A stretch of DNA of 63,527 nt, the filler included, from Olpidium bornovanus S191 (Eukaryota > Fungi > Olpidiomycota), in NCBI GenBank assembly GCA_017911155.1. It is 34 parts of 34 records of this genome, joined end to end, with 100 filler letters (N's around TTAATTAATTAA, not from the genome) between each part and the next. Parts side by side here need not be neighbours in the genome. Positions count along the whole stretch, not along the records: positions 22,413 to 24,473 come from JAEFCI010003381.1; 33 more parts are not named here. One strand, given 5' to 3'. The translations under genes were made by a program, and so were the position numbers. The notes beneath the pieces were generated by a model, which was given only the letters and a program-made list of their open reading frames with translations, did not search any database and had not been told where the DNA came from. Shown piece after piece: positions 5,272-24,573 of the stretch (positions within the stretch are counted from its first letter, which is position 1; each line of letters starts with the position of its first letter).

Positions 5272-6045
5272 CGGTTGGGAGCGAAAGCCAAAAAAAAAAA
5301 TACAAAACGACAACCGCGACGACGACAAACCGACGACGGCGAGAGTAAAAGCGAGTTTGCTGTTACTCCCTGGTGCGTGGCTCGGTTGCTCCGTCCCCGG
5401 CTTTTAGGCCCTTTCTCGAGCGCAAAATGCCGGCGACACGCCACGCGCGCCCGTGAACCGCCTGGCGTCGGGAACCGAGGTAGGTAGACGTTTAATTCAT
5501 TTTAGTTTTTTGTTATTTTTTTTTTCTTTTTTTACTCAAGCGTCGTTGCCCGAGGCGTCCTCCGGCCGACCCGCCGGCGTTTGCCCGCCGGACGGCTACT
5601 AACGTCGCACACCCACGCGGGCGTTAGACAGAGTGCGTCCGAACCATCGACACGCTTGCAGAAATGGGCAGGCGGAAATTGACCTGCGCCGCGGTGTTTT
5701 TCCCGCCGTTTCTGCGTCGACCGCGCAGAACGCCTTGGCAGCGAGGAGCGAAACGAAACCTTTCCAAACGGAAGGAAGGAAGCAAAGGAAGGGTGTGTCG
5801 GATACGTTTCGCGGAAAGAACATGCCGAAGGCCCGCCAAAGAGCACGGTCGATAAGCCGCATGGCATCCGACAGGCCGTCTGGTAACGCATCCGGCAGCA
5901 AATTTGCACGTCGGCAACTCATTACTAACAATTTCTCAAAATGTTTTTGAACTCGTCTCCGCCATCTATCGTTGACTCCATCAATCAAGCGGTAGAGTCT
6001 CGCCGTTCGTGGCCTTTGCGAACGCGCGATTTACTAGGTTGTAAG

Positions 6046-22412: not shown

Positions 22413-23865
22413 ATCTGCTCATCGATAATTTTGTGACGTTCGTCCTCCAACTTCTTCCGGTAACGGAATTCACGCGTATTCACACGAACGCCTTGAGAAT
22501 TGTATACGGGCTCTGGTGACGGAGATCTGCATGTTGAGAAGTAAACCGAAGACGTTAAGAATAAATAGATCAGTGTGCTTTCGATGTGATCTTGTGGGCA
22601 AACTCACCGTTTGCCGTCCGGAGGTACGACGTCTCCCGTTCGCAATTTTTTTCCAATTTCTTCAAGCCTGATATGCGCTAGAAAGTCAAAGACAATCAGA
22701 ATGAGAAATAGTTATATTTTTTTAGCAAAAAAAAAAGTGTGGTGTCGTCGCTCCTACCTAAGTACGAGTCCAATTGTTCCTTGGACATTCCAGTGGGTAG
22801 AGCAGTGGGCATTCCAGGGATAACGACCTTTTCGGTTTCTCCACCCCAGCGGCTGCGCTTTTTACGTTTGCCTCCATCATCCGCTGTTCAATAAGGTTGA
22901 GAACCAGTGAGATAGAAAAATTCCAAAATAAACAACGTGGGTCAGAGAGATAAAGTTAGCAATTTTCGCGTTCCCGTTAGTAGTTAAAGCGTCTCCAGGG
23001 CGATGGGTAGATCCAAGTGATACGGGCACCAAAAAATCCGAATGGTTGCCGTCCGGGTTAGTCACCAAAACCGCCCCCTCGCCCGCCGAGGTTGCTTATC
23101 AGCGGTTTGTTAGCCTCTGAACAGCAACGCAGGCTTAAACGTTCACATTGCCCTGCAGACAAAGCGGGACCGCTGTGGACCCTCGCGGACGAGGGTTCGG
23201 GCGGTGACGAGCTCCACGGTGCACGTTGCACGCGGCTACGCGACTGGTGCAAGCCAGCCCGTTGGCCCGTTTCCAGCGCGCAGCTTCCACAATCCCAGAT
23301 GCCAATGATAAAATGGCCGGCCGAGAGCGCCAGGAGAGGGGAAGAGGCCGAGTTTGTGCAGCCGACGAAGGGGAAAAGTCGAGTCGTGCCGCAAAAGCGA
23401 GGGAGAGCACGTAAGACAGCACACGGCGGAGCGGTGGAAAGCGGTTACCACATTACCTGGCTGCTCCTTCTTCGCGTCAGGAGAGCGCGAGCGGCCACGG
23501 CTTCCGCCGTACTGGCCAGCATCCGAATTTCCCAAATGCGCGGAGTATCCGCCGTAGCCGCCGGGGCCGGTGAGAGCCTGGTGATTGTTCATAGCGACGC
23601 CGACCTTGTATCCCCCGTATCCACCGGCGGCCCCGTAAAGCTCGCCGGCGCCGTTGCCACCGTAGTCATTTCCGCCGTAGGCTTCCCCTCCTTCCCGGCC
23701 AGCGCCAGCGTCCTGGTCGTAGTTCTGGCCGAAGCGCCTCTTGTTCCCGAGAGGCGCGGTATTCGCTCCGGTAACGGCTTCGGCGGTGCGGCACGAGCCC
23801 ATGCCTCCCATACCCCACGGCGCCGGAACTGCGCGCCTGTCTGCTTCGCCCCTGCGTTCTTGCAT
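22413..23865 (-). CDS. MSL5: Branchpoint-bridging protein / splicing factor 1 (3' partial)
   Basis: Fungal N-terminus [16 protein letters not shown], Gly/Tyr-rich exon to 23457, intron 23456-22884, then [14 protein letters not shown] (ULM)...[74 protein letters not shown]. Start ATG could be 23865, 23811 or 23802. Confidence 0.93.
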
Positions 23866-24573
23866 CTGGACTACCCCTAAGCTCCGGATTGAGGAAGGAT
23901 ACTGAGGCACGCAGGTCGTGGAGACGCGCGATGTGCCGGGGAAAGGGAGCTCTTTTTTGGGGAGGAAAAGCAAGGGGGGTGCCTCGGCGGAGGAGGGGGT
24001 TGGAGGAAATTTGTGCTGCGGAGCGAGTGGGAAAGTCACGTGCCCTCCTCGCCTGCACCGTCGCCAGCAGTCCCAATATAGAGCGAAGAGGAAACTTGAA
24101 CAGGCAATCGAGGCACTTTTTCCTTTTCCGGGGAAAGCGCCGCGTGTTGACTCCGAAGTCTCCGCTCGGGGGTGATCAGCGCTCCAGGAGGCATTACAGT
24201 AATATGCGACCACACAATTCTCGGTGGAAAAAAAAAAAGAAAAAGAAAAAGTGCACTGCCACTTCGCACCTTCTACAAGGACACCAGAAATACTTACAGC
24301 TCCTAGTGCAAGACTTCTACTGGGGAAGCGCAAAAAAACAACTTCTATTGCGCTTTCTCTCACTGGTTTGCACTGAATTGCCAGATGGGCGCCTTCAACG
24401 GCTGAATATGAAATTGGTCTTGGCGGTGGGAAAATGGACATAACCACGCAAACCGCGAGCAATCAAAGGCATGNNNNNNNNNNNNNNNNNNNNNNNNNNN
24501 NNNNNNNNNNNNNNNNNTTAATTAATTAANNNNNNNNNNNNNNNNNNNNNNNNNNNNNNNNNNNNNNNNNNNN

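What the first reader, a model, noticed from the sequence alone, without database searches (positions are those of the whole stretch)
22884..23456. Branch-point motif cluster and PTC-creating alternative 3' splice sites in the BBP/SF1 gene's own intron: candidate autoregulatory splicing switch
Seen: this 573-nt intron is several times longer than the ~80-100-nt introns next to it. On the sense strand it holds four CTAAC branch-point motifs in about 160 nt: GGCTAAC (23115-23109), GACTAAC (23063-23057), perfect TACTAAC (22982-22976) and TGCTAAC (22961-22955), plus TTAAC (22987-22983) and CTGAC (22945-22941). Two upstream AG acceptors exist: TGTCTGCAG at 23153, and GATAAG at 23095, about 13 nt after GGCTAAC. 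With the phase-1 donor at 23456 they reach stops at 23058-23060 and 22877-22879, before the RKKRSRW ULM. The acceptor at 22884 keeps the frame. Established: BBP/Msl5/SF1 binds UACUAAC through its KH-QUA2 domain, and many splicing factors self-limit by unproductive splicing and NMD. Inference: excess BBP binds these sites and shifts splicing to the poison acceptors or to intron retention. I know of no description of this in zoosporic fungi.
Basis: partly seen in the sequence, partly recalled or inferred. Interest (0 to 1): 0.8.

Follow-up and report, generated by a model that had tools for sequence, protein, structure and literature searches.

The report
Retained branch-site-rich intron in SF1
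The gene for the protein that recognises intron branch sites has a cluster of perfect branch-site motifs in its own long first intron; that intron stays unspliced in most of the gene's RNA, and the same arrangement recurs in distant fungi, which points to a self-limiting feedback loop I could not find described.

Summary
The minus strand encodes the N-terminus of SF1/BBP. Its 573-nt phase-1 intron (23456-22884) has four CTAAC motifs at the stated places, against 0.7 expected, none antisense and none in the other 1489 nt of the piece.

New evidence changes the picture. In RNA assemblies of this organism the two 80-nt introns are spliced but the long intron is retained. In run X2 it accounts for about 63% of k-mer depth. 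In run X1 the retained form is the only one assembled.

The closest relative's cDNA contig also retains the homologous 474-nt intron, which has eight CTAAC. The same intron is 311-410 nt with 3-4 CTAAC in Spizellomyces, Rhizophagus, Gonapodya and a Glomeromycota-like contig. 39 other SF1 introns together hold three. Batrachochytrium, Podila and Mucor lack the cluster. Aspergillus has one in a different long intron.

Best reading: a conserved, mostly retained regulatory intron whose branch-site cluster couples SF1 output to SF1 availability. The unproductive product is intron retention, not poison acceptors. SF1 binding, the direction of feedback and the fate of the retained RNA are inferred, not shown. 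I found no published description.

The parts
23866..23985 (-). 5' UTR, as far as RNA contigs reach
   Evidence: The X2 contig ends at 23985 and the X1 match ends at 23956. Depth is zero at 24000-24275. There is no upstream ATG.
23457..23865 (-). Exon 1 coding part: 136 codons plus 1 nt. It has the conserved N-terminal motif TGANTAPLG followed by a Gly/Tyr-rich stretch.
   Evidence: Translation. The motif aligns with TG(A/T/S)N..PLG at the N-termini of fungal SF1 proteins. There is no Pfam match.
22884..23456 (-). Long phase-1 intron (573 nt, GT..AG), retained in most transcripts
   Evidence: Spliced junction 22883|23457 at depth 81.3 against the retained path at depth 138.8 in X2. The X1 contig runs unbroken from 22758 to 23956 with both small introns removed. 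All of the intron's sampled words are held in eight likely-RNA runs plus one run of unknown type.
23236..23238 (-). First in-frame stop of the retained-intron transcript (73 codons into the intron); seven more follow
   Evidence: Translation of exon 1 + intron + exon 2
23109..23115 (-). GGCTAAC, branch-site motif 1; branch A is 226 nt from the 3' splice site and the first downstream AG is 15 nt away
23057..23063 (-). GACTAAC, branch-site motif 2; A is 174 nt from the 3' splice site
22976..22982 (-). TACTAAC, perfect yeast-type branch site; A is 93 nt from the 3' splice site, inside the AG-free zone
22955..22961 (-). TGCTAAC, branch-site motif 4; A is 72 nt from the 3' splice site, inside the AG-free zone
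22941..22945 (-). CTGAC, weaker branch-site-like motif about 58 nt from the 3' splice site
22886..22992 (-). AG-exclusion zone (107 nt, pyrimidine-rich, 36% G+C at its 3' end). Any branch formed at the two proximal CTAAC or at CTGAC would use the authentic acceptor.
   Evidence: AG list. AGEZ is 107 nt against a shuffle median of 29 (P = 0.056 here; 88-149 nt and P <= 0.03 in the five other cluster-bearing orthologues).
23153..23154 (-).
23095..23096 (-). Upstream AG 15 nt after the branch A of GGCTAAC; sterically possible, not seen in use
22758..22883 (-). Exon 2, with the U2AF-binding [11 protein letters not shown] (22869-22846)
   Evidence: Translation; Pfam SF1-HH positions 1-37, E = 1.6e-4; 297 library hits
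22678..22757 (-). Intron 2 (80 nt), fully spliced, no CTAAC
   Evidence: Joint 22677|22758 in X1 and X2, depth 0 inside
22608..22677 (-). Exon 3
22527..22607 (-). Intron 3 (81 nt), spliced in the X1 and X2 contigs, no CTAAC
   Evidence: Joint 22526|22608 in X1 and X2
22413..22526 (-). Exon 4 (SPSP / helix-hairpin part of SF1), cut by the edge of the piece
   Evidence: Pfam SF1-HH 58.9 bits

Best explanation
The 573-nt intron is a conserved regulatory intron of the SF1/BBP gene. It is left in most of the gene's transcripts, and with the intron in place the reading frame stops 73 codons into it, before the U2AF-binding motif and the KH domain. Only the spliced minority can therefore make SF1. 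The 3' half of the intron carries several copies of CTAAC, the core of the optimal SF1/BBP binding site. These sit far upstream (72-226 nt) of an acceptor preceded by a long AG-free pyrimidine-rich spacer; close to the acceptor there are only weak branch-like sequences. I propose that SF1 protein occupies this cluster and so sets the splicing rate of its own pre-mRNA. When SF1 is abundant, the distal sites are filled. The transcript is then held as an unspliced, probably nuclear, complex, because SF1 must be evicted before U2 snRNP can bind and because bound BBP retains pre-mRNA in the nucleus. When SF1 falls, U2 gains access and the stored or new pre-mRNA is spliced. Shown: the motifs and their excess, the retention, the premature stop, and recurrence of the long, motif-rich intron in other fungal lineages. 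Inferred: SF1 binding, negative direction of the loop, nuclear detention.
For: (1) Retention. In run X2 the retained path has depth 138.8 and the spliced junction 81.3; together they equal the exon 1 depth of 217.7, so about 63% of transcripts retain the intron. In run X1 a 3879-nt contig has both small introns removed and the long intron present. Intergenic depth is zero, so this is not DNA. All of the intron's sampled words are held in eight likely-RNA runs from two studies plus one run of unknown type.
(2) The retained form has a premature stop.
(3) Motif excess here: 4 against 0.7 expected, with none antisense.
(4) The closest relative's cDNA contig L004 (79% identity over exons 2-4) also retains the homologous phase-1 intron (474 nt) while everything downstream is spliced. 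That intron has 8 CTAAC. The two introns cannot be aligned, so motif content is kept rather than sequence.
(5) The same phase-1 intron just upstream of the ULM exon is 410 nt with 3 CTAAC in Spizellomyces, 384 nt with 3 in Rhizophagus, 311 nt with 4 in Gonapodya and 342 nt with 4 in L002. The other introns of those genes are about 59-150 nt with none.
(6) Pooled over nine introns: 30 sense CTAAC against 4.6 expected (Poisson 3e-15; 6e-12 leaving out this window) and 1 antisense. 39 other SF1 introns give 0.95 per kb and 53 kb of flanking DNA gives 0.57 per kb per strand, against 7-17 per kb in the cluster introns.
(7) Between two Rhizophagus-like sequences the 5' part of the intron is 60% identical, while the 3' 215 nt holding all three CTAAC is 88% identical.
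(8) Established background. BBP/SF1 binds UACUAAC. Loss of BBP lets pre-mRNA leak to the cytoplasm (PMC2377449, citing Rutz and Seraphin 2000). SF1 is evicted when U2 snRNP joins (PMC13004596). Tandem UACUAAC in Gomafu RNA binds SF1 more tightly than mammalian branch sites and slows splicing in vitro (PMC3116199).
Against: No binding or perturbation data exist. The direction of the loop is a guess: a cluster of strong sites could equally help the intron capture scarce SF1. Batrachochytrium salamandrivorans keeps a 567-nt intron at this place with no CTAAC, and Podila and Mucor have neither the length nor the cluster, so the cluster is not universal. CTAAC is also the U2 snRNA pairing site, so the sensed quantity could be U2 snRNP. 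Retention was measured from assembled contigs in two runs, not from reads; the two raw-read runs I tried laid no reads. I could not compare with other long introns of this genome.
Confidence: 0.55

Rival explanations
1. This is a long intron that simply splices slowly. The extra CTAAC copies are redundant branch sites or splicing enhancers that long introns need in short-intron fungi. Retention is a by-product with no feedback.
For: The intron is 7 times longer than its neighbours, and its best branch motifs are 72 nt or more from the acceptor. In L002, Spizellomyces and Rhizophagus all CTAAC lie in the AG-free zone, so each could act as a real branch site for the authentic acceptor.
Against: The equally long Batrachochytrium orthologue has no CTAAC, so length alone does not require them. 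In Aspergillus three of the four copies lie 12-30 nt from the 5' splice site, 218-233 nt from the acceptor, where they cannot serve as ordinary branch sites. That the exceptional intron recurs in the SF1 gene itself across phyla, while its sequence turns over, is hard to explain by neutrality. This rival does not explain why selection keeps a costly intron that is about 60% retained in an essential gene.
Confidence: 0.2
2. The intron senses general spliceosome capacity (U2 snRNP or overall splicing load, for example under stress or in dormant spores) rather than SF1 itself. The CTAAC copies act through U2 snRNA pairing.
For: CTAAC is complementary to the U2 branch-recognition sequence (established knowledge). 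Stress-induced intron retention is documented in a zoosporic fungus (PMC2773782, seen). A core U2 gene, SF3B1, keeps about 50% of its transcripts as a nuclear intron-retaining form in erythroblasts (PMC6097662).
Against: The cluster was found in the SF1 gene in seven fungi and was absent from 39 other introns of those genes. SF1 is the factor that reads this motif first. I did not examine any U2 snRNP protein gene.
Confidence: 0.15
3. One reading: the main unproductive route is a shift to upstream poison acceptors (23153, 23095) followed by nonsense-mediated decay.
For: Both acceptors give premature stops. The AG at 23095 lies 15 nt after a CTAAC branch A. Decay could hide such products from steady-state assemblies.
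Against: No contig carries either junction, while the retained form dominates. 23153 has no CTRAY motif upstream. Three orthologues have no AG after any CTAAC.
Confidence: 0.07
4. Chance clustering with no function.
For: For this intron alone P is only about 0.003-0.006, and eight other 5-mers also occur four times in it.
Against: There are independent recurrences in six other sequences: Poisson 6e-12 without this window, strand bias 30:1, and local conservation in Rhizophagus.
Confidence: 0.03

Closest known systems
Fungal srp2 (SRSF5 orthologue) retained intron coupled to NMD (Lareau and Brenner 2015, PMC4379411)
   Same: A splicing-factor gene in fungi keeps one unusually long intron at a conserved position. 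That intron is retained, contains in-frame stops, and yields an unproductive mRNA. The intron sequence itself is poorly conserved.
   Different: That case is an SR protein; this one is a core early spliceosome factor. Here the intron carries a countable cluster of the factor's own core recognition motif. NMD sensitivity is shown for Neurospora srp2 and is not tested here.
Intron 4 retention in SF3B1 through decoy splice sites (Parra et al. 2018, PMC6097662)
   Same: A core branch-site-recognition gene expresses about half of its transcripts as an intron-retaining isoform. Internal splice-signal copies are proposed to engage the machinery non-productively.
   Different: That case is a mammalian intron longer than 1 kb with cryptic exons bound by U2AF, and it is developmental rather than shown to be autoregulatory. 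Here there are only branch-site copies in a 0.3-0.6-kb fungal intron. I did not establish a decoy exon.
Gomafu/MIAT lncRNA tandem UACUAAC repeats (Tsuiji et al. 2011, PMC3116199)
   Same: Clustered yeast-type branch-site motifs in one RNA. Those repeats bind SF1 with higher affinity than ordinary branch sites and slow splicing in vitro. The RNA is nuclear.
   Different: Gomafu carries the repeats in an exon of a non-coding RNA and acts in trans as a sponge. The repeat was not needed for its nuclear localisation. Here the cluster lies in an intron of the SF1 mRNA precursor itself, which would close a loop in cis.
BBP/Msl5-dependent nuclear retention of unspliced pre-mRNA in budding yeast (Rutz and Seraphin 2000, as cited in PMC2377449)
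   Same: It provides the step by which SF1 bound to a branch site could keep an unspliced transcript in the nucleus and away from translation and NMD.
   Different: That is a general quality-control role. Yeast MSL5 is not known to me to have an intron or such a loop (from memory, not checked here).
SF1-Quaking competition for ACUAA branch sites (PMC13004596)
   Same: It shows that occupancy of ACUAA-type branch sites by a STAR/KH protein decides whether splicing proceeds, and that SF1 must be replaced by SF3B/U2.
   Different: That is competition between two proteins on other genes' introns in mammals. The text hits I read there do not mention autoregulation of SF1.

Membership tests
Autoregulatory unproductive splicing of splicing-factor genes | The gene encodes a splicing factor | tested here: met
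   Pfam SF1-HH at 58.9 bits on exon 4. 79% identity over exons 2-4 to a full-length SF1 with SF1-HH, KH and zinc-knuckle domains.
Autoregulatory unproductive splicing of splicing-factor genes | An alternative isoform carries a premature stop and cannot make the protein | tested here: met
   The retained-intron RNA is present. The stop at 23238-23236 lies before the ULM and KH domain.
Autoregulatory unproductive splicing of splicing-factor genes | The factor's own binding motif lies in the regulated region | tested here: met
   Four CTAAC including one TACTAAC, 6-fold over expectation. This shows motif presence only; binding was not tested.
Autoregulatory unproductive splicing of splicing-factor genes | The isoform ratio responds to the level of the factor | not testable with these tools
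   Needs over-expression or depletion experiments.
Autoregulatory unproductive splicing of splicing-factor genes | The unproductive isoform is degraded by NMD | not testable with these tools
   Its high steady-state share (about 63%) argues for nuclear detention or NMD insensitivity rather than rapid decay, but this is inference.
Detained introns (post-transcriptionally spliced nuclear introns) | One intron stays in otherwise fully spliced transcripts | tested here: met
   The X1 contig has introns 2 and 3 removed and intron 1 present. L004 likewise has every downstream intron removed.
Detained introns (post-transcriptionally spliced nuclear introns) | The transcripts are polyadenylated, nuclear and later spliced | not testable with these tools
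   No fractionation or time-course data. The library type of X1 and X2 is not on record.
Decoy-exon-mediated intron retention | A cryptic exon with both 3' and 5' splice sites lies inside the retained intron | not tested
   Branch-motif copies and some downstream AGs exist. I did not search systematically for paired donor sites, and no contig shows a cryptic exon.
   No junction to 23152 or 23094 in the contigs of X1 or X2. Contigs drop rare forms, so low use is not excluded.
Gomafu-type SF1 sponge RNA | Tandem UACUAAC repeats in an exon of a stable non-coding RNA acting in trans | tested here: not met
   The motifs are intronic in a coding gene, are dispersed over 160 nt, and only one is a full TACTAAC. 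A side effect in trans of the abundant retained RNA is not excluded.

The most novel reading that the evidence does not exclude
An ancient feedback circuit in fungi in which the branch-site binding protein measures its own concentration on a cluster of optimal branch sites in a detained intron of its own pre-mRNA. The circuit would be kept by selection on motif number while the sequence turns over. It would have been lost in some lineages (Batrachochytrium, Mortierellomycotina, Mucor) and re-created in a different intron in Aspergillus. This would be autoregulation of a core spliceosome factor through a core splice signal, rather than through an auxiliary enhancer or silencer.
Probability: 0.45. 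Interest if true: 0.85.

Novelty: new variant of a known kind. Interest (0 to 1): 0.72.

Why it matters
SF1/BBP starts branch-site recognition on every intron, yet how its level is set is not known, and I found no paper describing autoregulation. If the circuit is real, a core splice signal doubles as a concentration sensor. That would explain why short-intron fungi keep one long, wasteful intron in this essential gene. It would also give a simple, mutable cis-element (3-8 pentamers) for testing how SF1 occupancy, U2 entry and nuclear retention of pre-mRNA are linked. Two of the species that carry the cluster, Spizellomyces punctatus and Aspergillus, can be genetically manipulated (from my own knowledge), so the idea is directly testable. 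It also bears on annotation: gene models of SF1 in these fungi are likely to miss exon 1 or mis-place splice sites around the retained intron.

Tried and rejected
- Rfam scan of the piece: nothing in the intron, only a chance sRNA hit at E = 0.37 elsewhere. An embedded snoRNA or known RNA is therefore unlikely.
- Folding of the intron: z = -1.74 and 4 of 100 shuffles fold as well. There is no case for a structured element.
- Raw-read runs X21 and X24, which carry the same species label: no reads laid, so no test. That single read-laying run was the only one allowed.
- Search for the organism's own protein: exon 1 as query found nothing, and the exact read-through ORF is not on record. The organism is therefore not identified. 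By exons 2-4 the nearest sequence is an unnamed transcript at 79%, then Glomeromycotina at 70-77% and chytrids at about 64-66%.
- Aligning this intron with that of the closest relative gave no meaningful alignment.
- k-mer search for a second shared motif in the seven cluster introns: only CTAAC-containing words and T-rich words recur.
- Metagenome scan (27 loci): most were spliced transcripts or lineages without the intron. It was useful only for two Rhizophagus-like copies and two Mortierella-like copies without the cluster.
- The idea that the retained RNA codes for a shorter SF1 was rejected. There are eight in-frame stops in the intron, the last two codons before exon 2, and the first downstream in-frame ATG lies after the ULM.
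- The idea that the intron signal is genomic DNA or an independent overlapping transcript was rejected. Intergenic depth is zero, a single contig joins the intron to spliced downstream exons, and the depths add up.

Full report
WHAT IS THERE. The piece 22413-24473 carries the 5' end of an SF1/BBP gene on the minus strand. Exon 1 runs from the ATG at 23865 to 23457. It encodes the conserved N-terminal TGANTAPLG motif and a Gly/Tyr-rich stretch. A 573-nt GT..AG intron in phase 1 follows (23456-22884). Exon 2 (22883-22758) encodes the [11 protein letters not shown]. Two short introns of 80 and 81 nt separate exons 2, 3 and 4. Exon 4 matches Pfam SF1-HH at 58.9 bits, and exons 2-4 are 79% identical to a full-length SF1 with KH and zinc-knuckle domains.

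THE OBSERVATION. Four CTAAC motifs lie at 23113, 23061, 22980 and 22959. Dinucleotide shuffles of the intron predict 0.70, so P is 0.003-0.006. There are none on the antisense strand and none on either strand in the remaining 1489 nt. The copies have different flanks and are not a recent duplication. The last 107 nt before the acceptor are free of AG, and the two proximal CTAAC and a CTGAC lie inside that zone. The two upstream AGs do give premature stops at the stated places.

RNA EVIDENCE. I laid four runs on the piece. The two raw-read runs gave no reads and are no test. The two assembled RNA runs, from different studies, are informative.
- In X1 a 3879-nt contig has introns 2 and 3 removed but runs unbroken from 22758 to 23956, so it retains the long intron.
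- In X2 the assembly splits at the intron. The retained path (22857-23486) has depth 138.8, the spliced junction 22883|23457 has 81.3, and exon 1 has 217.7, the sum of the two. About 63% of transcripts therefore retain the intron.
- Depth is zero in intron 2 and in the intergenic stretch 24000-24275. This is RNA, and the retention is specific to this intron.
- No contig uses the acceptors at 23153 or 23095.

A second index query with the intron alone found all of its sampled words in eight likely-RNA runs from two studies plus one run of unknown type. With the intron retained, the frame stops at 23238-23236 and meets seven more stops before exon 2. The retained form therefore cannot make SF1.

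RELATIVES. A profile-free search with exon 2 and two word-index searches gave SF1 sequences whose DNA I fetched. I threaded each protein exactly onto its locus to obtain gene models.

The closest relative, L004, is a cDNA-derived contig. Its 523-codon SF1 frame is uninterrupted downstream, but it retains the homologous phase-1 intron (306-779, 474 nt). That intron holds eight CTAAC. It cannot be aligned with the intron here.

The same intron, always in phase 1 and 5-12 codons before the basic ULM, looks like this elsewhere:

| Sequence | Length (nt) | CTAAC |
|---|---|---|
| L002, Glomeromycota-like contig | 342 | 4 |
| Spizellomyces punctatus | 410 | 3 |
| Rhizophagus irregularis | 384 | 3 |
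| Gonapodya sp. | 311 | 4 |

All other introns of those genes are about 59-150 nt and hold none.

The cluster is not universal. Batrachochytrium salamandrivorans keeps a 567-nt intron there with no CTAAC. Podila has 116 nt and none. Mucor has no intron at that place. Aspergillus awamori has a 58-nt intron there, but it has a 251-nt intron in the KH domain, against 51-59 nt for its others. That intron has four CTAAC, three of them 12-30 nt from the 5' splice site.

Pooled over nine introns there are 30 sense CTAAC against 4.6 expected (Poisson 3e-15; 6e-12 without this window) and one antisense copy. 39 other SF1 introns hold three in 3145 nt. 53 kb of flanking DNA has 0.57 per kb per strand, against 7-17 per kb in the cluster introns. 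AG-free zones of 88-149 nt precede the acceptor in all six cluster-bearing first introns. Between Rhizophagus irregularis and a related metagenome contig, the 5' part of the intron is 60% identical, while the 3' 215 nt with all three CTAAC is 88% identical.

HOW IT MOST LIKELY WORKS. Three things are shown. The intron is mostly retained. The retained form is unproductive. A cluster of the optimal SF1/BBP recognition core is maintained in this gene's exceptional intron in several fungal phyla while the surrounding sequence turns over.

From established knowledge:
- BBP/SF1 binds UACUAAC.
- Loss of BBP lets pre-mRNA leak from the nucleus (PMC2377449).
- SF1 has to be evicted for U2 snRNP to bind (PMC13004596).
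- Tandem UACUAAC binds SF1 tightly and slows splicing in vitro (PMC3116199).

I infer that SF1 occupies the cluster and sets the splicing rate of its own pre-mRNA. High SF1 would favour a stalled, nuclear, unspliced complex, and low SF1 would allow U2 entry and splicing. The high steady-state share of a stop-containing RNA fits nuclear detention better than cytoplasmic decay. Binding, the direction of the loop and localisation are all untested.

The main rivals are listed with their tests.

COMPARISON WITH WHAT IS KNOWN. The kind is known. Splicing-factor genes limit themselves by unproductive splicing. In fungi the SRSF5 orthologue srp2 keeps an unusually long, retained, stop-containing intron at a conserved place (PMC4379411). 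Human SF3B1 keeps about half its transcripts as a nuclear intron-retaining form through decoy splice sites (PMC6097662).

Two things are different here. The factor is a core early spliceosome protein. The cis-element is several copies of the core branch-site signal that the protein itself reads.

Eight full-text searches and the papers I read turned up no description of SF1/BBP autoregulation or of this intron. The library is not exhaustive.

VERDICT. I rate it a new variant of a known kind, of high interest because it is conserved, simple and testable.

Noticed in passing
L010:2716-2981 (Aspergillus awamori SF1 gene): The deposited gene model uses an acceptor 15 nt too far downstream (annotated intron end 2981), so the annotated protein lacks IGLLI of the KH GXXG loop (EINF|RPRGNTL). 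The AG at 2965-2966 restores EINF-IGLLIGPRGNTL. This 251-nt intron is the one that carries four CTAAC, three of them right after the 5' splice site.
   Followed up: partly
L003 (Batrachochytrium salamandrivorans P0142), around residues 180-190: In the alignment the annotated protein lacks the 13 residues DFPEINFIGLLIG that B. dendrobatidis and all other fungi have. This is probably a mis-placed splice site next to the 179-nt intron 5282-5460, at the same KH position as the long Aspergillus intron.
   Followed up: no
window 23956 and upstream: The X1 RNA contig matches the window only up to 23956 and then continues for about 1 kb with A+T-rich sequence that is not in the window (loose end reading CCAGAATTCAAATTAATTTTATAAAGAAAA on the plus strand). 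The X2 contig follows the window to 23985. There is no AG at the break. It may be a chimeric assembly through the A-run, or another 5' end.
   Followed up: no
window 23457-23865: The N-terminal motif TG(A/T/S)N..PLG is shared by SF1 proteins of chytrids, Glomeromycotina, Gonapodya and metagenome relatives. It is always encoded in the exon upstream of the long intron. The Gly/Tyr-rich spacer after it is peculiar to this organism and has no Pfam or database match.
   Followed up: partly
window 24223-24258 and 24320-24473: A long T/A homopolymer-rich tract lies in the untranscribed gap upstream of the gene. A separate transcript (contigs of 384 and 1758 nt) starts or ends at about 24320-24380 and runs off the piece.
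   Followed up: no
window 22884-23456 and L004:306-779: Both retained introns are exact multiples of three (573 and 474 nt), yet both are closed by in-frame stops. The 5' half of the intron here is 59-68% G+C, like the exon, and the last 73 nt are 36% G+C.
   Followed up: no
L004:450-622: In the closest relative, part of the eight-copy cluster seems to have grown by local duplication: a weak 27-nt direct repeat ending in GCTAACA, and the repeated CTAAC..AAGTCGGAA.
   Followed up: partly
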